This document shows, one piece after another, positions 5,672 through 53,392 of a stretch of DNA of 64,000 bases. The DNA is taken from positions 12,725 to 76,724 of the forward strand of contig NIVC01000678.1 in NCBI GenBank assembly GCA_002269645.1. The letters are read 5' to 3'. A program made the position numbers and the translations under genes. The DNA comes from Macrostomum lignano (Eukaryota). Positions within the stretch are counted from its first letter, which is position 1. Each line of letters opens with the position of its first letter. The notes beneath the pieces are model-generated. The model did no database searches and had not been told where the DNA came from. It saw only the letters and a program-made list of their open reading frames with translations.

Positions 5672-13586
<7,915 letters not shown>

Positions 13587-23597: not shown

Positions 23598-25271
23598 TTG
23601 AAATTTTTTTCGTTGGAAACCGAAAAACAACGGAATCCAGAACTGGAAAAACGAAAAGAAACCGCAATGCAGGACTTGGTCATGCCTACAGGCACGACAA
23701 TCAGGTCACAGGAGACGCAAACGTCAAACAAGGTGGCGACTCCAAATGAACAAACAATGGAACCAGTTTGTACGATCCCGATGAGTGAAGCAAGCGTGAA
23801 GACAAACACGACCATAAGAAGGCGAACTATGGAGAACAAGATGGTCGAAATGAGAGCGAACACAACAATAGCGCCAAGACAAACCCTACGAATCTGGCCA
23901 ATGATTCTGATGGGACTGCTCATTTTTGCCGGAAGTTTCTGCGAAATCGAAGCGATGCAAACGGAAGGTACGCACACGCAATATGTGGACAGTCCAAAAT
24001 TTCGCACCGACATTGGAGCCCCCATAGCAATTCGGCTGCCGGAACAACAGGACTGCAAAATTCCAAAGGAAGGACAAGACGGACGGATAAAGCTTAAATT
24101 AACTTTACACGATGAGAACGCCGAGACACATAAAAGTGTCATGAAGATATGCCACAGAGAAGACTACAGTTTCACAGCGCAACTGTACAAAATCGCAGGA
24201 AAAACAGTATTCGTGGACTTGACAGTAGCGATTAAGCCACGAACAGTCACAGTGGAACAATGTAACTCGTGGAATGCAGGAGCTACAACAGAAGATGGAA
24301 CATTGGAAGAAGACCTCAAAGTGGATGGTCGCATCAGCCGATACTCTACGAAAAAATGGGTTCGAAATGACCTAGATAATCTGGCTAAGACCGGAGAGAA
24401 ATTAGAAATAACAGTCAGCACTGTGTTGACGAATGTACCATACTACGTTTCGGAAAATGGAATGAACTCGTTGTATGTGCCAGTAGACAAATGCAAATAC
24501 AAGGAGAGCAAGTGCCAACGGGACGAGAAAGCGGCAAATTTTAAAATATGGCCACTAGAACGCACTTTACCAGAACGACTTTGGTCAGTGACAAACTTCT
24601 ACGACAGAGAATATCGAGTGCGAGGTTCAAGACTGTACCAGATGGTATGGACAGTGCATGAACATTACCAATGCCAGTACCAGAAAGGACGACAACTGGT
24701 CGGATACATGCACACGGACTGGTTTCAATCGGAAGATATGACATACGTGCTAACCTTTCAGAGACCAGTAAAACTGAATGCATCATGTGCAGAAGACAAG
24801 TATACTTTATACAAGGCGGAAGCTCTAAGATTAGCTCGAGAAATCGCCAGACACAATCTACAGCAAGCACAAAAGCGAACGCACAAACAAGCCAACAAGG
24901 GGCGACAGCAAACGACTCTACAAGTAGGTGACAGAGTCATGCTACAAGAACCACTAAGAACTGCAAAACATCAACCACAATTTTCGGGACCGTATAGAGT
25001 GATTCGGAAACTCAACGAAACGAATGTAGCCATCCGATCGGAAGACAATAACAAGGAACCAATGCGGGTACACGTCGACAGATTAAAAAAGATGCAGAAC
25101 CCGGAGGAATCTGTTTTCTTGCCCGATTTCCAACCGACGGACCCCAGAAGAATGGCACTACAGCAGAGGAAGCCGCTATATAGAACAATTGGCACGCAAG
25201 TCTCGGATGAACTGGAAGAGCATCCCGCTCATGCATACAACTTGCGGAGCAGGGACAAAATCCAACACTAA
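23598..25271 (+). CDS. Retroelement ORF: hydrophobic signal-like segment + Cys-rich glycoprotein-like region fused to an integrase C-terminus
   Basis: IWPMILMGLLIFAGSFCEIEA, then a Cys-spaced ectodomain-like region, then REIARHNLQQAQ..LQVGDRVML..FSGPYRVIRKL..VHVDRLKK..YNLRSR. Confidence 0.75.
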   Translation: MKFFSLETEKQRNPELEKRKETAMQDLVMPTGTTIRSQETQTSNKVATPNEQTMEPVCTIPMSEASVKTNTTIRRRTMENKMVEMRANTTIAPRQTLRIWPMILMGLLIFAGSFCEIEAMQTEGTHTQYVDSPKFRTDIGAPIAIRLPEQQDCKIPKEGQDGRIKLKLTLHDENAETHKSVMKICHREDYSFTAQLYKIAGKTVFVDLTVAIKPRTVTVEQCNSWNAGATTEDGTLEEDLKVDGRISRYSTKKWVRNDLDNLAKTGEKLEITVSTVLTNVPYYVSENGMNSLYVPVDKCKYKESKCQRDEKAANFKIWPLERTLPERLWSVTNFYDREYRVRGSRLYQMVWTVHEHYQCQYQKGRQLVGYMHTDWFQSEDMTYVLTFQRPVKLNASCAEDKYTLYKAEALRLAREIARHNLQQAQKRTHKQANKGRQQTTLQVGDRVMLQEPLRTAKHQPQFSGPYRVIRKLNETNVAIRSEDNNKEPMRVHVDRLKKMQNPEESVFLPDFQPTDPRRMALQQRKPLYRTIGTQVSDELEEHPAHAYNLRSRDKIQH

Positions 25272-30705: not shown

Positions 30706-31852
30706 TTAGCGCTTCCTGCGCATCCTCAGGAAGTTGTTCTTGCGCCAGAAGGCGTGCCGACTACCGCCAATGGTCTGGTGGAACCGGTGACCCTTGCCCA
30801 GTCCGCGGCTCTTCTTAGAAGAGCTGGTCAGGCCGCGCATCTCCCTGTGCTTGTGCTTGGCGGTGCAGATCCAGTTGATGCGCGGGTCGCGCCTGATGGC
30901 CTTGTGGTTGGGATCCACCAGGATCACCTCGTAGAACTTGTAGGTGGAGTCCTGCGCGATCCAGTAGGAGCCCAGCACGCGGAGGGCGCCGATCTTGCGG
31001 CCGATTCGCTCCTGGTGTGTGGGAATTGGTTTGGGCATTGAATTGCAGAATGGAAGCCGCTTATCAAATTCATTTATCCCTTTATCATCCCGCTTCAGTT
31101 GTAGCCTAGTGCCACCCCTCCCTGTTCTTTTGTCATAGAGTGCCGCCACCCCCTGTTCTTCAGCCATAGAGTGGCGCCACCTCCTGTTCTTCAGCCATAG
31201 AGTGGCGCCACCCCCTGTTCTTCAGCCATAGAGTGGCGCCACCTCCTGTTCTTCAGCCATAGAGTGGCGCCACCCCCTGTTCTTCAGCCATAGAGTGGCG
31301 CCACCTCCTGTTCTTCAGCCATAGAGTGGCGCCACCCCCTGTTCTTCAGCCATAAAGTGGCGCCACCCCCTGTTCTTCAGCCATAGAGTGGCGCCACCCC
31401 CTGTTCTTCAGCCATAGAGTAGCGCCACCCCCTGTTCTTCAGCCATAGAGTGGCGCCACCCCCTGTTCTTCAGCCATAGAGTGGCGCCACCCCCTGTTCT
31501 TCAGCCATAGAGTGCCCTTTCCCCGGTCACACGTGACCCTGACCTCGGCGATGGCCTGATGGCTGCGCTGGTTCTTCAACTGGTTGACACCCTCGTGCAC
31601 CGGCTTGCCATAGGTGGCGCCCTTGGGCACCGGGCGCTTGCGACCGCCGCGGCGGATGCGGATCCGGTAGATGACGAAGCCCTGCTTGGCCTTGTAGCCA
31701 AGGCGGCGGGCCCTGTCCGGCCGGGTGGGCTTGGTGGCCCGGTGGATCACGTGCCTCTGGCGCAGGTGCCAGCAGCGCAGGCGCAAAATGAAGCGCATCA
31801 CATCGGATTGCTTTTTGCGGTACAGCTCCGAGATGAACTTGTAGGCGCCCAT
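30706..31852 (-). CDS. RPL15: 60S ribosomal protein L15
   Basis: Exons 31852-31544 and 31011-30706, phase 0. [28 protein letters not shown]|[24 protein letters not shown]. Confidence 0.98.
31140..31515 (+). repeat. 31-bp minisatellite CTGTTCTTCAGCCATAGAGTGGCGCCACCCC in the RPL15 intron
   Basis: About 12 copies. Confidence 0.96.
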
Positions 31853-32280: not shown

Positions 32281-32574
32281 ATTCTAAAAATGCTGACTGT
32301 GCTTAAATTTCATTATTTATTGCAAAGCAAATACTAATCGAGCAATCAATGCGTCATTAAATTTATTGATCAACAGTAAACATTTCTACAGCAGAATAAA
32401 TGTGAGCGATACAGCCCCGAATAAGCGAGTCAAAAACCAAAAATTGATTATAAGCCGAGGCATTTGATAACTACAATAACCACCTTGTGCTAAAGTAAAG
32501 GGAAGAAGAAATTTAAATAAGTGGGGATTCGTGGGTTGATGAAAGTTTTATTATTAAACTGACAACCAAAAACA

Positions 32575-33045
32575 GACTGTAAAAGGGAATTGCCAATAGG
32601 ACACGGTAAAAGGGAATTCCCATAGGACACGGTAAAAGGGAATTCCCAATCTAGGACACGGTAAAAGGGAATTCCCATAGGACACGGTAAAAGGGAATTC
32701 CCAATCTAGGACACGGTAAAAGGGAATTCCCATAGGACACGGTAAAAGGGAATTCCCATAGGACACGGTAAAAGGGAATTCCCAATAGGACACGGTGAAA
32801 AGGGAATTCTCAGTAGGACACAGTGAACAGGGAATTCCCAATAGAACACAATGAACAGAGAATTCCCAATAGGACACGGTGAAAAGGGAATTCTCAGTAG
32901 GACACAGTGAACAGGGAATTCCCAATAGAACACAATGAACAGAGAATTCCCAATAGGACACGGTGAATAGGAAATTCCGTATAGAACATAGTGAACAGGG
33001 AATTCCGGTAGAACACACTGAACATGGAATTCCCAATAGGACATC
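32575..33045 (+). repeat. 26-28-bp minisatellite AGGACACGGTAAAAGGGAATTCCCAT between CTU1 and RPL15
   Basis: Direct reading; palindromic GGGAATTCCC core. Confidence 0.92.
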
Positions 33046-33120
33046 TGGTGAGATAGCTATTCCCAAAATAGACTCTCAAAACACTAGAAGGCGATTCCAA
33101 AGAACAGATTTAAAAAGTCA

Positions 33121-35240
33121 TCAAGAATCCGCCGCCGCAGCGCATGCCGATCCCGAGCAGCCGCGCCTGGCGCCGGCGCTACCGCAGCATTGGGCGCGAT
33201 TACGCCCAGCATCAGTAAGCATTCGCTGCTGCTGTTGCTTAGCCGAACAAGCCGAGGATTTGCCAACAGCCAGCCGGGGATTGCCGGAGTTCAAGCCGTC
33301 CAGCAGCACGCAGGCTTTGCACACTGGCTGGCTGCTGACGTAGCCGCACAACCGGCAGGTGTCCAGCTCCGGCATTCGAGCATCGGTACGGAATCGAATC
33401 TGTTCAGCGGCCTGGATAATGTGCAGCAGAGCGGCCGGCCTGGCCCGCTCCAGATCCTTCACCAGAGCCCTGGCGTGGCCCCTGTAGGCAGCCGGGGCGT
33501 ACAGGCACTCGGTGGCGAAGTAGTCAAGCCGTTTGAAATAGGCGTAGAGCACGATCTCCTTCTCGTAGGCGTACTTTAACGGCTTGCAGCGGGCCGGCAG
33601 GCCGCCGCCCGTGTGGGTGACGCCGTCGGCGCAGCGGGACAGCCTGGCCGCGTCGCCACGCAGGAGGTTCATCACGACGGTCTCGGCCACATCGTCAGCA
33701 TTGTGACCGGTGGCCAGTTTGTCAGCTTTAAGATGACCGGCGCCTCTGTCCAGGGCCTGGCGACGGAACACGCCGCAGAAGGTGCAATTGCTGCGCCGGC
33801 CAGCGGCCCGGACAACTTCGTCCATTGTCCAGCCGTACAGGTCGCGATAGGTGAAGATTGTGAGGGGCAGGCCGAGGCTGACCTGTACAATTTGATGGAA
33901 AAAGCCTGTTATACTACTTGATAATAAACAGCGTAAGTAGCTTTCTAATTTTATTTAACTTTTGATTCAATCCATAAGCTAAATTGTGAAGTTGATACCT
34001 GGACTTTAAAAGGTATTACCTGGGTTTCACAGGTGATACCTGGGTTGGACAGGTGATCCCTGGGTTTCACAGGCGATACCTGGGTTTCACAGGCGATACC
34101 TGGGTTTCACAGGTGACACCTGGATTTCAAAAGTGACACCTGGATTTCAAATGTGATACCTGGATTTCAAAAGTGACACCTGGATTTCAAATGTGACACC
34201 TGGATTTCAAAAGTGACACCTGGATTTCAAAAGTGACACCTGGATTTCAAAGGTGACACCTGGATTTCAAAGGTGACACCTGGATTTGAAATATGACACC
34301 TGGATTTCAAATGTGATACCTGGATTTCAAAGGTGACACCTGGATTTCAAAAGTGATTTCAAAAGTGATACCTGGATTTCAAAAGTGACACCTGGATTTC
34401 AAAGGTGACACATTGATTTCAAAGGTGATACCTGGATTTCAAAGGTGACACATTGAGTTCAAAGGTGATACCTGGATTTCAAATGTGACACATTGATTTC
34501 AAAGGTGATACCTGGATTTCAAAGGTGACACATTGAGTTCAAAGGTGATACCTGGATTTCAAATGTGACACATTGATTTCAAAGGTGATACCTGGATTTC
34601 AAAGGTGACACCTGGATTTCAAAAGTGATATCAAAAGTGATACCTGGATTTCAAAAGTGACACCTGGATTTCAAAGGTTACACCTGGATTTCAAAGGTGA
34701 TACCTGGATTTCAAAGGTGATACCTGGATTTCAAAGGTGATACCTGGATTTCAAAAGTGACACCTGGATTTTAAAAGTGACACCTGGATTTCAAAGGTGA
34801 CACCTGGATTTCAAAGGTGACACCTGGATTTCAAAGGTGACACCTGAATTTGATACAAAATGCTACACTGAGTTAAAACGATGACAAACCTCTGTGCGCC
34901 TCAGAGCGTCCAGAGAATCGTCCCGATAACCGGCAATGCCCTCATCAATAGCCAGCAGGCGCAGATCCAGCCCATAATTGTGCCTCTCATTTAGCGTCTT
35001 CAATAGGTAGGCCAGCACAGTGGAATCTTTGCCGCCGGATGCGCCAATAGCGACGCGTTCGCCGGGCGAGAACATCCGGCTGGAGACGATCGTGTCGTGA
35101 GTTTCAGCTTCGAATGCCCAGAAGAAGCAGTCGCGGCAGACTGCGTGGCCGGTTTTTGGCCGACGAAGCTGCGGCTTCTTCTCGCAGAAACGGCACCTGC
35201 GCTGCGGCTGCCGCTGCGGTTCAGCCTGCGGTGAGGCGGC
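33121..35240 (-). CDS. CTU1: Cytoplasmic tRNA 2-thiolation protein 1
   Basis: Exons 35240-34890 and 33882-33121, phase 0. CRFC..CRDC zinc site, PP-loop [32 protein letters not shown]-terminal CRLC..CKAC. No genomic in-frame ATG upstream of the zinc site. Confidence 0.95.
34015..34850 (+). repeat. 20-bp minisatellite CACCTGGATTTCAAAGGTGA in the CTU1 intron
   Basis: Direct reading; CACCT/AGGTG hairpin-capable unit. Confidence 0.95.
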
Positions 35241-36335: not shown

Positions 36336-36714
36336 TGTTTAAGGTGCTTTACTTTGCAAAGGATAACCGAAACAAAAAGTTAGTCTTAAAACGAATATGA
36401 AGAAGTCACAATATAATTTGGTTAGCTAGCAAAAATATGCATAATATACTCAAACAGCATTATAAAGATAACAAATGTGCTGCTAAAACCGGACACAATG
36501 AAATATGAAATGCTGCAACAGCTGAAAATCTACACTGCGCCTTACTTGTAACTTTTTTAACACAAAGCAATAAGTTTGAATTTGCTGCAGAAAGATATAA
36601 GAACATTTAAAGGTGGAAAATATTGAACCTCAGACTGCAGCAATGGTTGTATTGCAAAAAGTTACGCTCATAATTCACAGGCTTTAGCAAAAAAACAGAC
36701 AAATTATACACATT

Positions 36715-37085
36715 GACCAATAGGAGCACGGCATGGATTCCTCAGTTCTCTTGACCAATAGGAGCATGGCATGGATTCCCCAGTTCTCTTGACCAATAGG
36801 AGCACGGCATGGATTCCTCAGTTCTCTTGACCAATAGGAGCACGGCATGGATTCCCCAGTTCTCTTGACCAATAGGAGCACGGCATGGATTCCCCAGTTC
36901 TCTTGACCAATAGGAGCACGGCATGGATTCCCCATTTCTCTTGACCAATAGGAGCACGGCATGGATTCCCCATTTCTCTTGACCAATAGGAGCACGGCAT
37001 GGATTCCCCAGTTCTCCTGAACAATAGGAGCACGGCATGGATTCCCCAGTTCTCCTGAACCAATAGGAACATGGCATGGATTCCC
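36715..37085 (+). repeat. 38-bp minisatellite TTGACCAATAGGAGCACGGCATGGATTCCCCAGTTCTC downstream of the POLRMT stop
   Basis: About 9-10 copies, each containing CCAAT. Confidence 0.95.
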
Positions 37086-37211
37086 CTAACAATTGTGAAC
37101 GTCAGAATGCGCTATACGCTTGAAACGGAAAGACGTAGCGCTTCTCAGGCACACAATAACAAATCTAGAAGATAGTAAGTTATCTGTACAAAAAATATTG
37201 CCACAAGCATC

Positions 37212-40200
37212 TCAGGAGAAGAAATACTCGGACCGCAACACCTCGGACAGATCGAAGTCGCCCTTGTCGGGAATCTGCAGAATTCGAGAATTAAATCGCT
37301 TAGCAGCCTGCAGCTTCTGGCCGCTGAGGCTGGCCAATTCTGACTGACGAAATGAGAACACGCGATCAATATGCGAGCTGAGATCGGCTAGGATTGGCTT
37401 GCTGTGCAGCTGGACAAACTGCTGCCTACAGATCCTGCCCATGGCGTCCACGTCGCACGGATGCGTCCAGAAGCAGTCGTGCACCGCGGCAAAAGTGACG
37501 CCAAACTTCTGGCACTCCAATGCCGTTAGCATCATATGACACGAGTCGAGCGAGTGCACAAAATTAGGCGGAAACGCGTTGGACTGTTTGACCGGATCGG
37601 GCGGATACGGCTGCACAATGGGCAGGCCTAGCGGAGTTCGCCATTGGATTGAAGCCTGCCTCAGCTTGGCCACGTCCTTGGCCAGATCGGTGAACCAGTG
37701 CTGAATGTGGGTGGCGCTAGTGAAAATCCTGCCAATGCTGGACAGGGTCAGTTTAGCCAAATAGGCTGCTGCCTTGTGCCGCATCTCGCTAGGGAACTCA
37801 GCGTCCTTCAGCCTGGCCAGGATCTGCTGTATGGCGCCGTACTCCGTGACGCCGTAGACTGTGGTCATCACCGACTGCTTGATTGTGCGCCTAACTACGT
37901 AGCCTTGAAGCGACTGGGCAACCGCGTGACCTTGAGCGGCATCGGCTACTCTGGTAGACTCTACCAGATCTACAACAGCCTGGTAGACATCTTGCGGCCG
38001 GTCAACCGCTCGCAGATTGACAGCCAGAGCGCCGGCCACATCCCGGCCCATTGCGGCGTAGTGTTGCAGTCCGTTGCAGCTGCCGTCCTGGTGCACAGGG
38101 AACGAACTCACGTAGCGTTCCGGCCCGTCTGGATGCCTGGCAGCGGCGAGGATCTCAGAGCACGTGGCCAGAGTCTGCCAGGGAGCTTCGTCGTTCTGCC
38201 ACCAGCCGCGCCCGGTCCAGGGCCGTTCGGCGCTGTCGATGATATCCGGCAGCAGCGAGTCGGCCATGTCTAGCCGTTCGGCGTTTGTCAATTTTTTGCC
38301 AAGATCCGCCACATTGATGGCGTGAATGCGGAGCCAGCGCCAGCCGCGCTCGCCCAGAGGCTTGGCATTGTTGAAGCGAAGCAGCGAGCGGGACAGATCG
38401 CAGCTCATGTGGTTCAGATGGGGTGGCATTGGGTAGGCCCGGCCTCTGCAAAAGTTAATTTTACTTTTCGATACATATTGGCTTTTTGTGCAGTTTTGTA
38501 TTTTTCGATACATATCGGCTTTTTTGTGCAGTTTTGTATTTTTCGATACATATCGGCTTTTTTGTGCAGTTTTGTATTTTTCGATACATATCGGCTTTTT
38601 TGTGCAGTTTTGTATTTTTCGTTACATATCGGCTTTATTTCTCAGCCAGACGGTTCTCGAAAAATTCAAAGACAGACAGACAGCGCAAAACATATAGATT
38701 ATACTACGCTCGTAATTATAATAATTAATATATTATTACTAACCGACTACTCACCGAAAGTCCATATTATGCGGCAAGTAGAACGGCCGGTCCTTCAGCC
38801 AATCGGCAATGGACAGCCGGTAAAGCTCCGTGCACCAGAGAGAATAGCGCTCCCTTTCAGCTTTGCGCTCGGCCGCTTTCTCCCGGCGTAGGGCGGCAAT
38901 GTCGGCCCTCGACGCGCCCGGAGCCGGAGGCGCCAGGCGCTCTACAGATCGGGGTCGGGCAGGCAGCGCCAGGTGCTCGGCGCCGCCAGAATTGAAGCGG
39001 TCAGTTATCAAGCGGAGCATGGCTCTGTCAACTCGCCAGGCGCAGGAGCTCACGGTCTGGTCGCGGTTGTTGGGGAGAATTCAATTGATAGGATTAGCGC
39101 GTGAAAAAAGAAACAGATAAAATGAAATATAGGACTGTTTGAGTGTGAATATGGGGATGCTTAAGGAATTTGCAGCAGTATTTAGAAGTATGCATTGTAT
39201 AGTAGTATAGGTTTCTGGGAAGAATCAAATTTAGTGGATTCTGAGTCTGAGATGATGCTGATTTAAAGGATTCGGGGATAATGCAGATTTAAAGGATTAT
39301 GAGATGCAAATTTAGAGGATTCTGAGTCTGAGATGATGCAGAATTAGAGGATTTTAGGATGACGCCGGTTTAGAGAATTCTGATATGATGCAGATTTAGA
39401 GAAGATTCTGGGATGATGCAAGCAGATTTAAAGGATTCTGGGATGATGCAAGCAGATTTAAAGGATTCTGGGATGATGCAGATTTAAAGGATTCTGGGAT
39501 AATGCAGATTTAAAGGATTCTGGGATAATGCAGATTTAAAGGATTCTGGGATGATGCAGATTTAAAGGATTCTGGGATGATGCAGATTTATAGGATTCTG
39601 GGATAATGCAGATTTAAAGGATTCTGGGATGATGCAGATTTATAGGATTCTGGGATAATGCAGATTTATAGGGTTCTGGGATGATGCAGATTTATAGGAT
39701 TCTGGGAGGATGCAAATCTAGAAGATTATGGAAAGATGTAGAACTAGATGATTTTGAAGAATTAAAACCAATATATACTAAAACAGACGAAGCCAAGAAG
39801 CCACAGATATTCTAATTGGCTAAAGAAGAAATCAAGTGACATGGAAAGCAAGAAAATAAGCTAACTCATACTCACATGCAGTGCCTCAAGAACAGTCGGG
39901 GGCGGCCCAGACAGTCGGATTTCGCTCATCTGGGCCAGGGCATATTGCCTTAGCAATTCCGTATTTAAGGTCATGTAGCGAGCTGGCCAAAAAGGCTTAG
40001 TCAGCATTGGCAGCTTGGATGGCTGGAACATCAGCTTGGTGGCATCCTGCGCCTGCTGAAATGCTTTAGCGACTGTCGGATGAGCCCGGATGTGCTGCAC
40101 GTTGCTATCGGGATCCAGAACTCCGTACGTGGCCGGCACGCCTCGATAAGTGAGCTGGGCCAGGTGATCGGTCAGGTATTTGCCTAATTCGATGCGCCAA

Positions 40201-43200
40201 TGACGGGGCAGAGGCGGCCAGCCCAGGTCACCAGTTTCACGACCCAGCTCCTGGGGAATTATGGGAATTATTCGTATTGCAATTAATTGCTCGAAGCTTA
40301 GATGCCACCACTTTTAACATTTAGATGACAGCTGATTGAGGATTTCTTTGATGTAAGATCCCATCTACTGAGTGGATACTTACTGCGAATCTAAAATCCT
40401 ATTTTTTAGGATCCCACTACTTAAGATCCGACGATATCCGACGATATAAGATACTATCAGCTTAGGATCAGACAGATCTAAGATCCCATCAGTTTAGGAT
40501 CAAACAGATCTAAGATCCCATCAGTTTAGGATCAGACAGATCTAAGATCCCATCAGTTTAGGATCAAACAGATCTAAGATCCCATCAGTTTAGGATCAGA
40601 CAGATCTAAGATTCCATCAGCTTAGGATCAGACAGATCTAAGATCCCATCAGTTTAGGATCAAACAGATCTAAGATCCCATCAGTTTAGGATCCCACAGA
40701 TCTAAGATCCCATCAGCTTAGGATCAAACAGATCTAAGATTCCATCAGCTTACGATCAGACAGATCTAAGATCCCATCAGCTTAGGATCCCACAGATCTA
40801 AGATCCCATCAGCTTAGGATCAGACAGATCTAAGATCCCATCAGCTTAGGATCAGACAGATCTAAGATCCCATCAGCTTAGGATCAGACAGATCTAAGAT
40901 TCCATCAGCTTAGGATCCCACAGATCTAAGATCCCATCAGCTTAGGATCCCACAGATCTAAGATCCCATCAGCTTAGGATCAGACAGATCTAAGATTCCA
41001 TCAGCTTAGGATCCCACAGATCTAAGATTCCATCAGCTTAGGATCCCACAGATCTAAGATCCCATCAGCTTAGGATCCCACAGATCTAAGATCCCATCAG
41101 CTTAGGATCCCACAGATCTAAGATCCCATCAGCTTTCCCATCAGCTTAGGATCCCACAGATCAAAGATCCCATCAGCTTAGGATCCCACAGATCTAAGAT
41201 CCCATCAGCTTAGGATCCCACAGATCTAAGATCCCATCAGCTTAGGATCCCACAGATCTAAGATCCCATCAGCTTAGGATCCCACAGATCTAAGATCCCA
41301 TCAGCTTAGGATCCCACAGATCTAAGATCCCATCAGCTTAGGATCCCACAGATCTAAGATCCCATCAGCTTAGGATCCCACAGATCAAAGATCCCATCAG
41401 CTTAGGATCTCACAGATTTAAGATCCCATCAGCTTAAGACCCGCTACTAGAGGACCCAGCCATGGAAAATCCCATTGCAAAGAAGTGTAATCAAAGCAGC
41501 ACTGACCGCTCTAGCTTTGCGCTGAATTTTTTCATAGAACAAATCCGTCAGATCCCGCATAAAGTGAGGCTTTGGCATGTACTGCACAGCCTGTATAGAG
41601 GCCAGCATCACAGCCTGGCTGAGCAGAAACTGTACAGTCTCCTCTTCATCAAGCGCAATCACCAGCGGATAGATGGTCCGCCTAGCGGTTCTCTCGTCTC
41701 TGACTTTCAACTGACGCCGACGCTCCGGCACCAGGCGGCGCAGCTCGCGCAGCCAGTGGTCGCGCACCGCGGCGGCCTCTTTGGCTGCCTGACGCCGAGC
41801 CGCAGGCGTCACGGCCGGCAGAGGCTCTGAGACGCAAACGATGGACACAGCGGGTTCGGACTGCTCCAGCTGTGAGGTAGGAATGATTTATTTCAATATA
41901 TAAGGGGTTGCAGCCTAGTGGTTAAAGCGTCGGACTCGCGACTGAAAGGTCGGGGGTTCGATTCTAGACTCACTTAGAACAATTGTGTCCATGAGCAAAA
42001 GACACTTAACTCTGCATTGCTTCAGTTCACCCAGCTGTAAAATGGGTGCCAGCATTAGTTGGGGTAATTGACGGTGTGTGTGGCGACCCCCCCCCCCAGT
42101 CCTGAGCTGTCGGTTGCTTATCTGCCTATCAGGGCAGGTGTAATCAATTAATTTTATAGTATCGGAATAATAAACCAATCAGACTACTTTGCAGTTAGTG
42201 TTAATCAGTAGTGCTGGAGACATTTTCTCATTTATTCTGATTAATATGACAGCTAACAAAAGTCATGTTAACCTGCTCAGAAACTGGTCCTGGCCGGTAA
42301 CACTTGCAGAGGCCCACAGCCTACAGAAAGAACTTACAGACAACTGAAGCGCTCGGTCCCCAGCGCTGTTGTCCTCGGGAGCAACAGACTCCGATTGCTG
42401 CTTTGTCGATAAAAGCGAAGGAAGCCCAGCCAAGCGCAGACCAGCCATCAGCTCAGCATCCTGAGCTTCATCCGATAATTGATTTTGCCAATTGGAATCG
42501 GCCGCCAATCTTACTGTTAATTCGGCAACCTCGGCGCTGTTTAATCTGCCGGCTGCGCGTAGGCCGAGCGCCACCGCGCCTGCGCTCAACTGCTGACCAT
42601 CGCGAGCGGCGCCGGCCAAGGTGGACAGGCTGGCCGAGAGGGTGGGCCGGTGCAGCAGGATGGCGGCCGGGATCTGCGAGGGTAAAGTGCGGTAGACCGG
42701 CATGTAAGAGCAGTCCTGGGGACGCTTCTGAGTGGCGGTTGACTCTAAACGTGTAGGGTCTGGAGACAAGATTCTCAATGGTAGTCTAGGGGCGATTCTC
42801 AATGGTTGTCTAGGTTCGATTCTCAATGGTAGTCTAGGGGCGATTCTCAATGGTAGTCTAGGGGCGATTCTCAAGGGTAGTCTATGGGCTATTCTCAATG
42901 GTAGTCTAGGGCGAGTCTCGATGGTAGTCTTTGGGCGATTCTCAAGGGTAGTCTATGGGCTATTCTCAATGGTAGTCTAGGGCGAGTCTCGATGGTAGTC
43001 TTTGGGCGATTCTCAAGGGTAGTCTATGGGCTATTCTCAATGGTAGTCTAGGGGCGATTCTCAATGGTAGTCTAGGGCGAGTCTCGATGGTAGTTTTTGG
43101 GCGATTCTCAAGGGTAGTCTAGGGCGAGTCTCGATGGTAGTCTTTGGGCGATTATCAAGGGTAGTCTAGGGGCGATTCTCAATGGTAGTCAAGGGCGATT

Positions 43201-44565
43201 CTCAGTGTTAGTCTAGGGGCGATTCTCAATGGTGGTCTAGGGGCGATTCTCAATTGTAACCTAGGGGCGATTCTCAAAGGTAGTCTAGGGATGATTTGAA
43301 GGGTAGTTCAGTGCTTTTAGCGCCCTAGAAACGTCGGTTTCTAGACCAGCACAGGAACTAGCAGATCATTCAATAATTTTTACCTGTTCGTCCAGCACAA
43401 CCGCCCCGGACCACAGGCTGGCCAAGCTGCCAAACCTGGCCCGTTGCTCAGCCAAATAAGCCGCCGCTTTGTCATGCTCGCCTCGCAGACACAGGCACAG
43501 CAGCCAGGCCGCCAGCTCTTCATTATATCTATCGGATTTTTGAATAAAGGCCAGGCCAATGTTGGGCGCGAACTGGGCCGGGTCCGGCCGCTGACGGGGC
43601 GGCGGCACCCGAGCTTGGAGCAGCTCGACGGCCCGTCTACAACGCCGGCGTAGATTGGCATCGAGCCAGAGCAGCTCGGACATCTGGCTGAGCTGCTGGA
43701 CGAGTACAACGGCCAGAGTGCGAGGACAGCGCACATTTTCTAGCCGCTGGGCCCAGTCAAAAACTGCCGCAATCTCCTTGGCTGACGCTTTTGCTTTCGC
43801 TTGGCTAGCAACGGGCGGCGATTTCGACTGCCCGCTCTGACGATGATCGTCGCCTGCTTCGCCTGTCGAGCGTCGACGCCTGGCAACAGAGGCGGCGGGC
43901 GCAAGCGCCGCTGTGCTCCGCTGTTGCCGGGCCGCAAAGCCTGCGAGATTAGTGAATTGGTGGTTTTGTAAGAAATATTCATTATTAAAACAACAAAAAT
44001 GGCTCTATCTTACTGTTAGTAGACCAAAGGGATATTAAATGACAGTAAATTAAAAAACATTGACATAGACATAGACAGTAATTCTAAGCATTGTGTACGG
44101 GTTTTATGCTGTGCAGACAGGATTTTCTGTTGGTCTAGAGGCGATTCTTAAGGATAGTCTAAGGGTGATTATCAAGGATAGTCTAACGGTGATTCTCAAG
44201 GATAATCTAGGGGCGATTCTCAAGGATAGTCTATGGGCGATTCTCAAGGATAGTCTAGGAGTGATTCTCAAGGAAAGTCTAATGGTGATTCTCAAGGATA
44301 GTCTAACGGTGATTCTTAAGTATAGTATTAGAGTGATTCTGAAAGGTAGTCTAGGGGCGATTCTGAAAGGTAGTCTAGGGGCGATTCTGAAAAGTAGTCT
44401 AGGGGCGATTCTGAAAGGTAGTCTAGGGGCGATTCTGAAAGGTAGTCTAGGGGCGATTCTGAAAGGTAGTCTAGGGGCGATTCCAAGCTACAAACGGCAA
44501 AACTTACAGTGCCGACAAATATGTTGTGTCTCTGATAAGGCAAAAATGCGAAGCAGCGGCAACAT
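37212..44565 (-). CDS. POLRMT: Mitochondrial DNA-directed RNA polymerase (T7-like), ~1074 aa, 7 exons
   Basis: Exons 44565-44508, 43940-43384, ~42673-42338 (acceptor uncertain), 41869-41507, 40250-39876, 39056-38755, 38445-37212, all phase-consistent. Motifs HNMDFR|GRAYP, HQDGSCNGLQHYAA, RRTIKQSVMTTVYG, FPPNFVHSLD, AVHDCFW. Confidence 0.95.
38465..38640 (+). repeat. 38-bp intronic minisatellite TTTCGATACATATCGGCTTTTTGTGCAGTTTTGTATTT
   Basis: About 4-5 copies in the last POLRMT intron. Confidence 0.9.
39230..39720 (+). repeat. 26-bp intronic minisatellite GGATTCTGGGATGATGCAGATTTAAA
   Basis: Direct reading; degenerate at both ends. Confidence 0.92.
40400..41440 (+). repeat. 32-bp GATC-rich intronic minisatellite GATCTAAGATCCCATCAGCTTAGGATCCCACA
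   Basis: Direct reading. Confidence 0.96.
41903..42140 (+). mobile_element. tRNA-derived CORE-type SINE, antisense in a POLRMT intron
   Basis: A-box-like TAGTGGTTAAAG and B-box GGTTCGATTC. Then TGTGTCCATGAGCAAAAGACACTTAAC..CAGCTGTAAAATGGG, which resembles the CORE domain. Confidence 0.8.
42765..43305 (+). repeat. 24-bp intronic minisatellite GATTCTCAATGGTAGTCTAGGGGC (POLRMT intron 2)
   Basis: Direct reading. Confidence 0.93.
44130..44482 (+). repeat. 24-bp intronic minisatellite GATTCT(C/G)AA(G/A)G(A/G)TAGTCTAGGGGC (POLRMT intron 1)
   Basis: Same family as the intron 2 array. Confidence 0.93.
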
Positions 44566-47500
44566 TCCTGAAATTTGTATTTTAAATCAAGTATTGCATT
44601 GTCGTTAGGAAATTATTAATGATTTTATAATTTCAGGAATTCCAGCCATCCATCTTTAAATGGGCTTAATAAGCAATTTTACATTTTCCAAAAAATGTTG
44701 CATTGATGCAAAACAGTCAATAAGCTTTATCCTATGTGAACATTTAGTGCTTTGTGACTAGGAATTAATCTAGTGATATAAGGTTTTGGTAGATAGAGCA
44801 TAAACCTAAGTTTTTTATCATCAAGATGACAGTCTCATTTGGCACCCTAGGTCTAGTCTAAACTTAGGATGCTAAATTGAAAACAGGAATTCTAGCTGGC
44901 ATCAATAGCAAATTCAAAGTCAAATAAAATGCCTAAGTCTAGCTTATCATTAAAATTTACATTTCCAAGATTCTCTAATGTACATAGGTTCAAAAAATCT
45001 AGACACCAGGTTTATAGAATCAAGGTTGAAAATCAATACACAAAAAGTCTTTAAACCCCAAGGATCCTAGCAATCCAAGAAGCTAAAGCACCTTTCAAGC
45101 TTACCACAAAAAAGACTATATGGCCAGAGGAAAATATGCAAAAAATGAAAAAAACCAGTAGAATTGCTTTGAATTCAAGCTGGTAATATTGGTATTTTTA
45201 AAATAATGTTTTATAACTAATTGGCCAAAAATGTGCTGCATACACCAAGGACTTCCATAGGCACTATGATTTTTATACCAGAGGTTAGCAAACTTTTTGC
45301 TTTGTAGTCTAAATACAAAACCTAGCATATGATTGTAGGCCAATAGAGAAAAGAGAGGAAGAAATAGAGAAGGGAGTAAAGATAGGAAAAGAAAAAAGAG
45401 AAAATAAAATAAAGAGGAGACACAAAAAGAGGAAGGATAAAATAAAAAGGGGAAAGTAGAAGAGAAAGGAAAGAAGATTTCTTAATATAGGCCTATATAA
45501 TTTTTGTGGTAAAGCCTATAAAGGCTAGGGCAAATTGAAAAAGTTTATGAGAAAGGGAAGAAGGACCAAGCTATACTAAATACTATAATCCAATATTATA
45601 GAAAATAGACCTTACATAGTTATATAGACCTTACATAGACCTTATCTAATTTTTTGCCTTAGCTAAAGGGGGGGGGGCAATAGCCTCCTGCCCCCCTTAG
45701 CCTAGATCTGCCTTTGGCAAGGACTACTTCTTAAGTATGGATATTTTTATATGTTGAATAGCTTGAAGCTGCAGATCTACTAAATCTATTCATTCATCTG
45801 ATATATTTCTTTATCTTTTCTAAAGTTACTATTATAATTTTGCTTTGTGCATCCTTGTTTAATGTTAACCTACCATAAACTTGAAAATTTGGCCATTAGA
45901 CTATTAGGCTAGTAGATAATAAAATACTTAATAGTCATTATCTAGATAAACTCAAATATAAAAATAATTACACAAAGCAAATTGCAAGATTGCCAAATAA
46001 GAAAAGTGGTTAACATGACAATAGCACTGTTAAAAAGCATGATTTAAAAAAATTAATGGCACAACATTTAATAGAAGATAAGAAACATATATAGATCTTA
46101 GGTTTTTTATGTGTAGAATGTGTGTACTTTAAATTTTAAAATTGCACTTTGAAATTGGGCATAAGTTAGGATTTCATACCTTGTCTGAGGCAAAAACCCA
46201 ATATATATGCAAAATGCAAGCTATGCAACATGTTTAGTATATAGATAGATCCTAGTCAAATTATCAACTGGCATTTTGTTACTGGGAAGCCATTGCTCTT
46301 ATGTCACTTTGTTGACTAGCCAATTAGTAGACCTCATAAATATGGTCACTTTATCAATTGCCAAACTATAATAGTTTGAAATAGTATAATGGGTTACACT
46401 GAATTCATCAACATCTAAGTTGTCAACAAATCTAAAATCCTAGAAATTGAAGGAAATTGAATTCATCAACAGTTAAAACAAGCTGAGCAAATTCATCAAC
46501 AACAAGACAAGACTTTTCCTAAAGTTGTTCTTTAATGCAATAACTGTAAATTTCTATAATTTAATGAGCAAAATGTTGCCAAAGACTTCAACAAGACGAA
46601 CTTGAGTGCACATTCTAAATGCTATTATGCATACACAACTCAAAATTTAATGAATTGGGCAATCAATGCTATGTACATAATTACTACCTTCTACATAGTT
46701 GTATATTCAGATGCAAATATATCAAGAGCTAGTCTATTGGGTGTTTTGTGCTGCATATGCTTTATTGCATCTTTAAAGTCACTTTAATTCAAGTTTTATA
46801 CCAAGTTTGTTGATTTCCTTAACCATTACCAAAGGTTTTGTTTGAGTATGACTTCAGATTTCTAAATTTATGCAAAAATAGTTCTCTGGATTTATTGCAA
46901 TTCAGTGGGTTTAAGATCTGCAGGTTTTAACAGGTTGTAAAAAAATATATATCAAATAAAAACCATTCACTTTTGTTATCTTATATGTACAAGTATCTTC
47001 TCAATATGCTTTTGTCTTTCATTTTTTTGCATATAGTAAAAAATATATACTAGCTACATGGTCAATAGTATATTGTCAGGTAACCAAATTTGTCAAACAG
47101 TGCATGATAAGGTAGACCGAATTGGTCAATAGAGTTGACAAATTAGATGTTGACAAATTTGGTGGCACCCAATATAATAATCACTTTGTCAACTATTCAT
47201 TATGTAAACATATATGTAATGCAATATTATATATATATATATATTAATGGCTATCTATGCCAAGAATTTTTCTATTAAACTCTGATATGAATGAAGCAAG
47301 TGAAGCAAGCAAGTGAGTTAATTTTGAAGTGCAATATACTACATTGACATATTGTTTTCAAATTGTATATGTTTAAATTTTCTTAAATTGACTTGAATTG
47401 ACTTATATTACAACAAAAAATATTTTAAAAAGAATAATAAATAATTATAAATAATTAATTAACCTAGCACTAAATATTGACCTTCCTTCAATTAAAAAAT

Positions 47501-51881: not shown

Positions 51882-53392
51882 CCGGGCTGCAACTGGCTTC
51901 GATCGGGAAAAAAATTCTGGCTCTGCCGGAGCAGAAAATTGCGTCAAAATGAAAAATAAGGGGGCAACTGGAAAGAGAGGAGATGAGCAAGCCAGTGAGC
52001 GATGAGGCTCGGTTGGCTTTATACTGGGCAAAGAAATCTGCCCACTTCCCGCCCGCCTCCTCCGTCTACCTGCCTAAACTCGTTTCCCAACTTCCCATTT
52101 GACTCGGGGCGGTTCATTACCGAGCGGAAACTGCCATTGGCCGTGCAGATCTAGAGGATATTTTTCTGCGCAGAACGCACACCCTGATACGTCCTGTTCG
52201 CTTAGGAGAGAAAATCAAAGAAAAGGGAACAAGGGATAGACCAATGAAGGGGAAATGTCTTCACCTATGCATATTGTCAAGCAACTGCCTTTTTACCGCG
52301 TTTTCTATCCCTTCCCCAGCTCTCCAACAGCCGATGCAGAGTGGCACGCCGGTCTGGTCAGACTCCGACCACTTTGTGCCGCTTTGAACCAGCGAGATCC
52401 GCCTCGCCACAGGGCTCTCTGTCCTCAACCACTCCACCTCAGCGTCCAGGATAGGAAAGCAATAGCACGCCACGTACTAGGGGGTCAATAGAGACTCAAT
52501 AGAGAAATAATACAGACAAGCGGCTGAATTTGCAGTCTGGACGAACAGAAATGTTTGTGGCTCACATTCCTACATTGTCAATTGGAATGATTAACTGACT
52601 TATCTATTAATAACCCTTTATTAAAAATCTATCGCTTAAACTTTAAATGTCACATCAGTCACGGAGCCCTTAGTTTTCAAAACTGGTATTGGATTTTTTT
52701 ACCTTATTGAAATCGGGCTTAAACATCTATTTCCATGCTATAATGGATCAGAATTCTCAACCTGCTCGCCTTTTTCCGTCGATGTCTATGGGCAAGACCG
52801 AATCTACTGCCTGCCAAATGGGATTTTCAACTTGGTTGGACTTACTATCAACTTGCCTGACAAAAGCAATGTTAGCAGAAAGGAGCTAAAAATAACTTTA
52901 AAATTGTTGAACACAAAAGAACATTGAGACCTAACGGGCGTTCAAACTTTCGCCCAATTCAGTTCTAGAACTGGTTGGAACAGCATTTTTTTCCCGAAGG
53001 GGCAGCAGCAGTTTGTGTGCGTGAGAATGTTTCACTGTACAGTTTTAATTTTTACCTCACTGAGAGCTTTAGCAGCAACGCAATATTGTGTATGAATTGG
53101 TGAGAGAAGGTGAGAGAGAAAGCCGCCCCTGCTCCCATGGTTTCCGAGAGGGTGGGGGCCGACCAGGGCAGATACGCTGAGAAACGGGCATTGTACAGTT
53201 CAGAACTAGCTGCACAGCGGGGCTAGAGAGTACACCCATGTCCAAACCCACGCTAGCAAGCTGCATGCCAGCGAAGTACAGTCGGGCGAGTAAAACAGTT
53301 GCTGGGCATGCAGTTTAGCTGACTGATGCAGCTGAAATCGACAAGAAGACTCTACTTTGGTCACAATACATGCCGCTGAATCCGATAGCGTC

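What the first reader, a model, noticed from the sequence alone, without database searches (positions are those of the whole stretch)
37575..37625. POLRMT appears to lack the promoter-specificity loop
Seen: the contiguous exon reads WRTPLGLPIVQPY-PPDPV-KQSNAFPPNFVHSLD, with only 5 residues between QPY and KQ.N. Established: in T7 RNAP and human POLRMT this interval (about 30 aa in human, from memory) is the specificity-loop beta-hairpin that contacts promoter DNA. All catalytic motifs are intact here, so this is not general decay. Inference: mitochondrial transcription initiation in this lineage may be promoter-independent or delegated to other factors.
Basis: partly seen in the sequence, partly recalled or inferred. 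Interest (0 to 1): 0.78.

Follow-up and report, generated by a model that had tools for sequence, protein, structure and literature searches.

The report
Mitochondrial RNA polymerase lacking specificity loop
An apparently intact animal (probably flatworm) gene for the mitochondrial RNA polymerase has cleanly lost the protruding hairpin that this enzyme family uses to recognise promoters, so this animal must choose where to start mitochondrial transcription in some other way.

Summary
The last exon of a six-exon POLRMT gene on the minus strand (38445-37212) reads ...WRTPLGLPIVQPY-PPDPV-KQSNAFPPNFVHSLD. Only 5 residues separate the Y of QPY from the K of KQxN.

The same interval is 31 residues in human (Y1082-K1114) and 33 in T7. 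It is 10-69 residues (median 29) in 251 homologues. Human residues 1083-1108, which include the whole specificity loop (1085-1108), have no counterpart.

This is the only indel longer than one column in the catalytic domain. D922, K991, Y999, H1125 and D1151 equivalents are kept. Conservation is within the range of other orthologues. An AlphaFold model closes the gap confidently.

The TFB2M-binding lever loop is also about 12 residues shorter, the shortest of 75 full-length homologues.

Neighbour-joining trees place the gene beside parasitic flatworms, whose loops are long (47-61). The loss therefore looks lineage-specific.

It is the extreme of a continuum rather than unique. A wasp and an ostracod have 10 residues, several unnamed sequences 13-15, and nematodes 17.

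It was not tested here. No transcripts, other gene copies or initiation factors could be examined.

The parts
37212..38445 (-). POLRMT last exon (residues 559-969 of the model, stop included). It encodes the C-terminal two-fifths of the protein, the catalytic palm and fingers part. The thumb helix lies upstream in exon 5.
   Evidence: Contiguous ORF. tblastn with five homologues covers 38447-37215. AG acceptor and phase fit the DFR|GRAYP junction. Pfam RNA_pol PF00940, E 4.9e-138. Human POLRMT structures, E about 1e-123.
37590..37604 (-). PPDPV: all that remains between the Y of QPY (human Y1082, T7 Y739) and the K of KQSN (human K1114, T7 K773). This is the site of the deleted specificity loop.
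   Evidence: In the MAFFT alignment human 1083-1108 has no counterpart, and PPDPV aligns with human K1109-R1113. The P-x-P-[ND]-P-[VI]-KQ base motif is shared with Fasciola, Paragonimus, Hymenolepis, Taenia and Dibothriocephalus.
37605..37643 (-). WRTPLGLPIVQPY: the conserved strand leading into the loop site.
   Evidence: W, P, Q-P-Y invariant or nearly invariant. Strand 501-503 in the model.
37548..37589 (-). KQSNAFPPNFVHSL: the conserved helix start after the loop site. It contains the H1125 (T7 H784) equivalent at 37554-37556.
   Evidence: Helix 510-539 of the model, pLDDT 89-94.
38085..38087 (-). Catalytic Asp of motif A (human D922, T7 D537) within VHQDGSCNGLQHYAA.
   Evidence: Invariant column.
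37854..37880 (-). Motif B residues K748 and Y756 of the model (human K991 and Y999; T7 K631 and Y639).
   Evidence: Invariant columns.
37476..37481 (-). Motif C His-Asp (human H1150-D1151; T7 H811-D812) within AAVHDCFWTH.
   Evidence: Invariant columns.
38755..39056 (-). POLRMT exon 5 (residues 459-559): thumb helix and NMDFRGR.
   Evidence: tblastn. GT/AG boundaries. Alignment to human 598-717 of chain 6erp_A.
39876..40250 (-). POLRMT exon 4 (residues 334-458): N-terminal domain with the intercalating hairpin and the remnant of the lever loop.
40080..40139 (-). Intercalating hairpin, VPATYGVLDPDSNVQHIRAH (human about 603-624). It is retained and is 2-3 residues shorter than usual.
   Evidence: Aligned to human SRLVPVLYHVYSFRNVQQIGILKPHP. 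Interval is 17 residues against a mode of 19. Two strands, 41-46 and 51-56, in the model, but pLDDT is only 51-61.
40140..40151 (-). TYRG: what remains of the lever loop, also called the B2 or TFB2M hairpin (human 588-604). About 12 residues corresponding to human 588-599 are absent. The R601 equivalent is kept.
   Evidence: Y368 aligns with human S600; the interval from the G of ELGK to the P of VPxxY is 15 residues, against 18-222 with mode 27 in 75 full-length homologues. Element defined.
41507..41869 (-). POLRMT exon 3 (residues 213-333): start of the conserved N-terminal domain, including the G-helix region.
   Evidence: Aligned to human about 410-486. GT/AG boundaries.
42338..42673 (-). 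POLRMT exon 2 (residues 101-212): an N-terminal extension with no detectable similarity to known sequences.
   Evidence: Open frame with canonical AG and GTAAGT boundaries in phase. No homology support.
43384..43683 (-). POLRMT exon 1 as modelled from the first in-frame ATG. The true start is uncertain.
   Evidence: The frame stays open upstream to about 44004 with no ATG, and there is an acceptor-like CAG near 43941.

Best explanation
The feature is the nuclear gene for the single-subunit, T7-like mitochondrial RNA polymerase (POLRMT) of an animal that groups with flatworms. The gene looks functional. Its specificity-loop beta-hairpin has been cleanly deleted: 26 residues relative to human, 1083-1108. 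The strand ...IVQPY is joined through PPDPV directly to the KQSNAFPPNFVHS helix.

Shown here: the deletion is real in this sequence. It is the only sizeable indel in the catalytic domain. The catalytic residues and overall conservation are normal. The gap closes in a confident structural model. The neighbouring TFB2M-docking lever loop is also truncated, while the intercalating hairpin is kept. The nearest sampled relatives have long loops.

Inferred: the enzyme still elongates normally. It cannot make the loop's contacts with the melted -4/-3 template bases or with the upstream duplex around -5 to -10. Start-site choice must therefore rest on other elements, such as a TFB2M/TFAM-like factor, the intercalating hairpin, the G-helix or the N-terminal extension, or it is much less sequence-specific than in human, yeast or T7.
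For: Contiguous ORF and peptide at the stated coordinates. Six-exon model with GT..AG at every intron. Pfam RNA_pol E 4.9e-138. Human POLRMT structures E about 1e-123, with the alignment split exactly at the loop.

Loop interval is 5 residues against 10-69, median 29, in 251 homologues, and 15-29 in three metagenome loci. The only consensus deletion longer than one column is the 25 majority columns after Y839, and there are no insertions in the catalytic domain.

The window matches 117 of 125 columns that are at least 90% conserved (93.6%). The median for the others is 96.7%, and 18 of 82 orthologues score lower. D922, K991, Y999, H1125, H1150 and D1151 equivalents are kept.

AlphaFold2 gives mean pLDDT 85 and pTM 0.81, with pLDDT 89-94 at the junction. 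The best structural match is the human POLRMT elongation complex, TM 0.82. The lever-loop interval is the shortest of 75.

NJ trees place the window with Fasciola, Paragonimus, Hymenolepis and Schistosoma, whose loops are 47-61.

Literature: the loop contacts the -7 to -3 region and reads -4G/-3G through T1101 and N1103 (PMC11642874; 10.1101/2025.04.03.647028; PMC8934621). Human del1087-1099 is active on a scaffold but dead on promoters (PMC4402542). The element was described as 26 +/- 3 residues in most or all phage-type RNAPs (Nayak 2009, as cited in PMC5040748).
Against: There is no expression evidence and no second sample of this lineage. The exact ORF is not on record in the assembly index. 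The junction DNA pattern is absent from metagenomes. No relative above 53-56% identity exists in any collection searched.

The 5' end of the gene is unresolved. The N-terminal domain is divergent: RPOL_N scores 16 bits against a cut-off of 30.1, and no PPR domain was detected.

Strongly shortened loops in other invertebrates (10-17 residues) suggest the loop may matter less outside vertebrates, yeast and phage. That would weaken the expected functional consequence.

The genome could hold another POLRMT copy outside this 64-kb window. Nothing here shows how initiation is actually achieved.
Confidence: 0.6

Rival explanations
1. Ordinary length variation. The specificity loop of metazoan POLRMT is a hypervariable surface element, and in many invertebrates it already contributes little. 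This gene is simply the short end of a continuum, and nothing special follows for initiation.
For: The interval ranges from 10 to 69 residues in 251 homologues. Values of 10 occur in the wasp Ampulex compressa, from two independent sources, and in the ostracod Cyprideis torosa. Values of 13-15 occur in several unnamed sequences and 17 in eleven sequences that include the named nematodes. Parasitic flatworms carry unrelated long insertions of 47-61 at the same site. Human initiation-complex contact residues R1003, R1007 and W1026 are only 40-60% conserved across the alignment.
Against: No other sequence goes below 10, even though the second search was centred on the junction and so favoured short loops. 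At 5 residues not even a turn of hairpin remains, and human K1109-R1113 accounts for all five. In every system tested (T7, yeast, human, plant) the loop is needed for promoter-specific initiation. The lever loop is co-truncated.
Confidence: 0.25
2. Redundant or decaying paralogue. A loop-bearing POLRMT elsewhere in the genome does the real work, and this copy is a pseudogene in the making or has a restricted role, for example priming only.
For: An element that is essential in model systems is missing. The N-terminal domain is divergent and no start codon could be fixed. Only 64 kb of the genome was visible.
Against: The reading frame is intact across six exons with canonical splice sites. All 40 invariant positions and 93.6% of the highly conserved positions are kept, which is within the orthologue range. 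There is a single clean in-frame indel and no frameshifts or stops. POLRMT is normally single-copy in animals (general knowledge, not tested). No second copy of the exon is present in the window.
Confidence: 0.12
3. Assembly or sequencing artefact, or a rare haplotype. About 75-78 nt were dropped in frame from an otherwise normal gene.
For: The genome is full of minisatellites, which can trouble assemblers. No independent sequence of this locus could be found.
Against: The deletion is exactly in frame and bounded by the conserved QPY and the flatworm-type P-P-D-P-V-KQ base motif. There are no repeats or low-complexity sequence around the junction. The second truncation in the lever loop, in a different exon, would need a second independent artefact.
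Confidence: 0.05

Closest known systems
Human POLRMT (for example PDB 4BOC, 5OLA, 6ERP, 9MN4)
   Same: The fold and domain order are the same: TM 0.82 over the modelled 636 residues and about 50% identity over the last exon. The catalytic residues are identical. The intercalating hairpin and thumb are present.
   Different: Residues 1083-1108, including the whole specificity loop 1085-1108, are absent. Lever-loop residues 588-599 are absent. R1003->E, R1007->I, W1026->H, R1113->V and K1116->S. The N-terminal extension is unrelated in sequence, with no recognisable PPR domain or tether helix. Total length is about 970 residues against 1230.
Engineered human POLRMT del1087-1099 (Morozov et al. 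2015, PMC4402542)
   Same: Both lack the tip of the specificity loop while keeping an intact catalytic core.
   Different: The laboratory mutant removes 13 residues and cannot support promoter-driven transcription, although it is active on a scaffold. The natural protein removes twice as much, and if it is the only copy it must sustain mitochondrial gene expression.
POLRMT of neodermatan flatworms (Fasciola hepatica, Paragonimus, Schistosoma, Hymenolepis, Taenia)
   Same: They are the nearest relatives in NJ trees. They share the P-x-P-[ND]-P-[VI]-KQ motif at the C-terminal base of the loop.
   Different: Their loop interval is 47-61 residues, about twice the usual length. In Fasciola it lies within a single exon.
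Short-loop invertebrate POLRMTs (Ampulex compressa and Cyprideis torosa, 10 residues; nematodes, 17)
   Same: They show independent, strong shortening of the same element in an otherwise conserved enzyme.
   Different: They keep 5-12 more residues, enough for a turn or a mini-hairpin. Their lever-loop intervals are 20-39 against 15 here. None has been studied functionally as far as the searched literature shows.
T7 RNA polymerase
   Same: It belongs to the same Pol A-type single-subunit family and has the same motifs A, B and C (E about 4e-40, TM about 0.72).
   Different: The T7 loop Y739-D770, with N748, R756 and Q758 reading bases -11 to -7, is its main promoter-specificity element (T7 sequence and residue roles recalled from general knowledge; loop role cited). 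It has no counterpart here.

Membership tests
Single-subunit phage-type (T7-like) DNA-dependent RNA polymerase, Pfam PF00940 | Significant match to the family profile. | tested here: met
   PF00940 scores E 4.9e-138 and 461 bits against a cut-off of 22. T7 RNAP structures score E about 4e-40.
Single-subunit phage-type (T7-like) DNA-dependent RNA polymerase, Pfam PF00940 | Catalytic residues of motifs A, B and C, and the H784 equivalent (T7 D537, K631, Y639, H784, H811, D812). | tested here: met
   All are present at invariant alignment columns. They correspond to human D922, K991, Y999, H1125, H1150 and D1151.
Single-subunit phage-type (T7-like) DNA-dependent RNA polymerase, Pfam PF00940 | Right-hand polymerase fold (palm, fingers, thumb). 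| tested here: met
   The AF2 model has pLDDT 85. Foldseek TM is 0.82 to human POLRMT and about 0.72 to T7 RNAP elongation complexes.
Single-subunit phage-type (T7-like) DNA-dependent RNA polymerase, Pfam PF00940 | Specificity-loop beta-hairpin between the QPY strand and the KQ..PNF helix, described as 26 +/- 3 residues in most or all members. | tested here: not met
   Five residues remain, and all align with the loop base. Human 1083-1108 is absent. The feature is defined.
Metazoan mitochondrial RNA polymerase (POLRMT orthologue) | Best reciprocal similarity to POLRMTs and placement among metazoan sequences. | tested here: met
   All 120 top hits are mitochondrial RNAPs, and those that carry a name are mostly animal, with two fungal entries near the bottom of the list. 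NJ placement is inside Spiralia, next to flatworms.
Metazoan mitochondrial RNA polymerase (POLRMT orthologue) | N-terminal domain with the intercalating hairpin. | tested here: met
   It aligns to human 600-625 and is 2-3 residues shorter. The model shows a hairpin, but at low pLDDT.
Metazoan mitochondrial RNA polymerase (POLRMT orthologue) | Lever loop, also called the B2 hairpin, which docks TFB2M (human 588-604). | tested here: not met
   About 12 of 17 residues are absent. The interval is 15 against a mode of 27, the shortest of 75 homologues.
Metazoan mitochondrial RNA polymerase (POLRMT orthologue) | PPR domain and TFAM tether helix in the N-terminal extension. | tested here: inconclusive
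   There is no Pfam PPR hit and no similarity upstream of model residue about 221. These regions are poorly conserved in sequence, and the 5' end of the gene is unresolved.
Metazoan mitochondrial RNA polymerase (POLRMT orthologue) | Mitochondrial targeting and actual transcription of mtDNA. | not testable with these tools
   The N-terminus is uncertain. No expression or localisation data are available.

The most novel reading that the evidence does not exclude
This animal's only mitochondrial RNA polymerase works with no specificity loop at all and with a vestigial TFB2M-docking hairpin. The promoter-reading module shared by T7, yeast, plant and human enzymes has been discarded. Mitochondrial transcription would then start by a different logic: recruitment purely by factors, or loosely specified initiation in the non-coding region of a genome whose genes all lie on one strand. 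Together with the wasp, ostracod and nematode cases, it would show that loss of this 'universal' element is recurrent in animals.
Probability: 0.45. Interest if true: 0.72.

Novelty: new variant of a known kind. Interest (0 to 1): 0.55.

Why it matters
The specificity loop is described as a conserved promoter-recognition element of all single-subunit RNA polymerases. Removing its tip from the human enzyme abolishes promoter-driven transcription.

A natural, otherwise well-conserved POLRMT that lacks it entirely, and that also lacks most of the TFB2M-binding lever loop, is a ready-made natural experiment. It shows which parts of the initiation machinery can be dispensed with, and it points to a lineage where initiation factors or promoter architecture must have changed to compensate.

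The survey made here also shows that the length of this element varies roughly 14-fold across animals, from 5 to 69 residues, with several independent near-losses. No paper noting this turned up in the literature searches. The variation bears on how mito-nuclear co-evolution of promoters and polymerase is modelled.

The practical value is modest until expression and gene copy number are confirmed.

Tried and rejected
1. Independent copies of this exact ORF. The 433-aa and 405-aa versions were looked up in the public assembly index and neither is on record.

2. A degenerate DNA pattern for QPYPP[DN]P[VI]KQ across 241 million metagenome records gave 0 matches.

3. Protein-guided metagenome scan. 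It returned 38 loci, none above 53% identity over the full length. Only three were readable across the loop, at 15, 28 and 29 residues.

4. Exon-loss hypothesis, that the loop was once a separate exon. In Fasciola the loop lies in the middle of a single exon, so there is no support.

5. Hidden exon or alternative exon in the window. tblastn finds only one copy of the region, and the junction lies inside a contiguous ORF.

6. Repeat-mediated deletion or an assembly slip at the junction. Nothing but chance-level 12-13 nt repeats lies within 200 nt on either side of it.

7. General streamlining of the protein. Rejected for the catalytic domain, where the loop is the only indel longer than one column. 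The N-terminal domain is shorter.

8. Organism identification through tRNA or Rfam features. No hits. The tRNA-like stretch seen in intron 2 is not a recognisable tRNA.

9. Literature. No paper describing natural loss of the loop, or mitochondrial promoters in flatworms, was found in the library.

10. Very short loop intervals in Ditylenchus dipsaci (P0232), P0255 and P0242 were set aside as probable gene-model artefacts. They also lack the conserved flanking strand, and other nematodes uniformly have 17. Neoechinorhynchus agilis (P0264) may be a second near-complete loss but comes from a single gene model.
Full report
**1. Observation**

On the minus strand, window:37557-37655 translates to ASIQWRTPLGLPIVQPYPPDPVKQSNAFPPNFV. 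The stretch lies in a single uninterrupted ORF, 37212-38513. The conserved part of that ORF starts at an AG acceptor, so the exon is 38445-37212. tblastn with five homologues covers 38447-37215 in one piece.

**2. The gene**

I reconstructed a six-exon model on the minus strand:
- 43683-43384
- 42673-42338
- 41869-41507
- 40250-39876
- 39056-38755
- 38445-37212

Every intron has GT..AG and every junction is in phase. The product is 969 aa.

The 5' end is not settled. The frame stays open upstream of the first ATG as far as about 44004 and contains no ATG there.

Pfam gives RNA_pol PF00940 at E 4.9e-138. RPOL_N is below threshold at 16 bits against 30.1. Against solved structures, the last exon matches human POLRMT at E about 1e-123, yeast Rpo41 at 3e-91 and T7 RNAP at about 4e-40. 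The upstream part matches human POLRMT from about residue 410 onward.

**3. What is missing**

HMMER splits the human alignment exactly at the loop. I anchored human numbering on T1101/H1102/N1103 and R1113/K1114. With that numbering:
- Window Y839 corresponds to Y1082.
- PPDPV corresponds to K1109-R1113.
- K845 corresponds to K1114.
- Human 1083-1108 has no counterpart.

Recent cryo-EM papers define the specificity loop as 1085-1108 (PMC11642874), so the whole hairpin is gone. The equivalent T7 interval, Y739-K773, holds 33 residues (T7 sequence recalled from memory; the register was checked against known residue numbers N748, R756, Q758, H784 and D812).

**4. Is it unusual?**

I measured the number of residues between the Y of QPY and the K of KQxN. 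Two searches supplied homologues:
- A word-indexed search with the whole last exon returned 120 hits, none above 53% identity.
- An exhaustive HMMER search of 1.84 billion representatives used a 125-residue query centred on the junction, which favours short loops. It returned the best 150 of 4800 hits.

Across these, 251 sequences have both anchors. Their range is 10-69, with median and mode 29. The window has 5. Three metagenome loci add values of 15, 28 and 29.

The shortest credible cases are:
- 10 residues: the wasp Ampulex compressa, seen both in an NCBI gene model and in an independent Logan contig, and the ostracod Cyprideis torosa.
- 13-14 residues: four unnamed clusters.
- 17 residues: eleven sequences, including the named nematodes Meloidogyne and Angiostrongylus.

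A few still shorter entries also lack the flanking conserved strand and are probably gene-model artefacts.

The window is therefore the most extreme case seen, but it sits at the end of a continuum of repeated shortening.

**5. Specific excision, not decay**

I aligned the window protein with 82 homologues.
- It retains all 40 invariant positions.
- It matches 117 of 125 columns that are at least 90% conserved (93.6%). The median for the others is 96.7%, and 18 of 82 score lower.
- In the catalytic domain, the only deletions relative to majority columns are one single column and the 25 columns of the loop. There are no insertions.
- Equivalents of D922, K991, Y999, H1125, H1150 and D1151 are present.

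An AlphaFold2 model of residues 334-969 has mean pLDDT 85 and pTM 0.81. At the junction a strand (IVQ) runs through a six-residue linker into the long helix that starts at KQSN, with pLDDT 89-94. The best structural neighbours are human POLRMT elongation and initiation complexes, TM up to 0.82.

**6. A second truncation**

The lever loop, or B2 hairpin (human 588-604), forms the TFB2M docking site together with the intercalating hairpin. In the window, helix ...HLAQLT runs almost directly into YRGVPATY. Y368 aligns with human S600, so about 12 residues (588-599) are absent.

The interval from the G of ELGK to the P of VPxxY is 15 residues. In 75 full-length homologues it is 18-222 with mode 27, so the window is the shortest.

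The intercalating hairpin itself is kept, at 17 residues against a mode of 19.

Some human initiation-complex contact residues are substituted: R1003->E, R1007->I, W1026->H, R1113->V and K1116->S. These positions are only 26-60% conserved among animals, so this is weak evidence. Model confidence in the lever-loop region is low (pLDDT 51-61), so this point rests on alignment.

**7. Lineage**

Neighbour-joining trees on 358 and 379 well-occupied columns, with loop columns excluded, place the window as sister to Fasciola, Paragonimus and Hymenolepis or Schistosoma (names).

Its PPDPVKQ matches the P-x-P-[ND]-P-[VI]-KQ base motif of trematodes and cestodes. A sponge also has that motif, so it is not diagnostic on its own.

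A flatworm origin is likely but not proven. All named flatworm sequences carry long insertions at this site, 47-61 residues, and these are conserved among cestodes. The deletion is therefore specific to the window's lineage. The site seems unusually labile in this phylum.

In Fasciola the loop lies in the middle of one exon, so exon loss does not explain the deletion.

**8. Mechanism**

Established from the literature:
- In human initiation complexes the loop inserts beside the upstream duplex at about -7 to -5. Together with the G-helix it reads the melted -4 and -3 template bases through T1101 and N1103.
- The loop is also used in yeast, plants, T7 and N4.

Inferred for this protein:
- Elongation chemistry is intact.
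- Loop-mediated promoter contacts are impossible.
- TFB2M docking through the lever loop is altered.
- Start-site selection must be carried by other protein elements or factors, or it is relaxed.

Platyhelminth mitochondrial genomes encode all genes on one strand (general knowledge, not tested here). A single initiation region with low demands on specificity would be enough. This point is weakened because long-loop parasitic flatworms share that genome organisation.

**9. Rivals**

- Ordinary variation of a hypervariable element with little consequence. This is supported by the continuum. Against it are the complete absence of the hairpin and the co-truncated lever loop.
- A redundant paralogue. 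This cannot be excluded from 64 kb of sequence, but the conservation pattern argues for purifying selection.
- An assembly artefact. This is unlikely, given the clean frame, the conserved flanks, the repeat-free junction and a second truncation in another exon.

**10. Verdict**

The identification of the missing element is correct. The functional inference is plausible but untested.

I class this as a new variant of a known kind: a POLRMT orthologue that fails two family-typical features, the specificity loop and the lever loop.

Interest is moderate. A specialist would be surprised that the loop can be dispensed with entirely, and the case makes the question experimentally approachable. It rests, however, on one genomic sequence with no expression data or gene-copy information, and it sits at the end of a previously unremarked continuum of loop shortening in invertebrates.

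Noticed in passing
window 40140-40151 (minus strand, POLRMT exon 4): The lever loop, or B2/TFB2M-docking hairpin (human 588-604), is reduced to a few residues. The interval is 15 residues against a mode of 27, the shortest of 75 full-length homologues. The adjacent intercalating hairpin is retained.
   Followed up: partly
homologues P0136/P0268 (Ampulex compressa), P0154 (Cyprideis torosa), P0098/P0101/P0107/P0130 (unnamed), L002:1501-2802, nematode sequences: Strong shortening of the POLRMT specificity loop recurs in unrelated invertebrates: 10, 13-15 and 17 residues against a median of 29. Parasitic flatworms instead have 47-61-residue insertions at the same site. No paper noting this was found in the searched library.
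   Followed up: partly
window 43684-44004 (minus strand): The POLRMT reading frame stays open for about 105 codons upstream of the first in-frame ATG. This stretch has no ATG, is arginine-rich and presequence-like, and has an acceptor-like CAG near 43941. The true start may lie in an upstream exon, or may be supplied by trans-splicing.
   Followed up: no
window 18628-20382 (+): An arginyl-tRNA-protein transferase (ATE1) ORF has Pfam ATE_N and ATE_C at its two ends. It is interrupted by about 300 codons of an in-frame 24-nt minisatellite (TNYQTGSG/E repeats). This is either an in-frame repetitive intron or a repeat expansion within the coding sequence.
   Followed up: no
window 5561-6545, 7712-8390, 9292-9843, 14472-16585, 32554-33066, 36684-37092, 38460-38640 (POLRMT intron 5), 42780-43320 (POLRMT intron 1), 44093-44608: The window is crowded with long minisatellite arrays in introns and intergenic DNA. 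They create spurious long ORFs on both strands, and one array begins about 120 nt downstream of the POLRMT stop codon.
   Followed up: no
window 41925-42000 (POLRMT intron 2): A stretch resembling the 3' half of a tRNA (GGTTCGATTC-type T-arm on the plus strand) may be a tRNA-derived SINE remnant. Neither ARAGORN nor Rfam recognises it.
   Followed up: partly
window 23598-25271 (+): A 557-codon ORF ends in a retroelement integrase C-terminal domain (Pfam Integrase_p58_C). It is probably a fragment of an LTR retrotransposon.
   Followed up: partly
window 53357-56071 (+): A 904-codon single-exon ORF carries DUF4062 followed by a weak STAND/AAA NTPase match. This is an NLR-like architecture of unknown role.
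   Followed up: partly
window 16648-17196 (+), 30706-31852 (-), 33121-35075 (-), 59093-60016 (-): The neighbouring genes are ordinary housekeeping genes: a mitochondrial carrier, ribosomal protein L15e (two exons), a CTU1-like PP-loop tRNA thiolation protein, and a C-terminal RING-finger protein. Exons have 55-60% G+C and lie among AT-rich spacers.
   Followed up: partly
POLRMT model residues 760, 764, 782 (window about 37776-37844, minus strand): The positions equivalent to human R1003, R1007 and W1026 contact the template and the +1 base in the human initiation complex. Here they are E, I and H. These positions are only 40-60% conserved across animals.
   Followed up: partly
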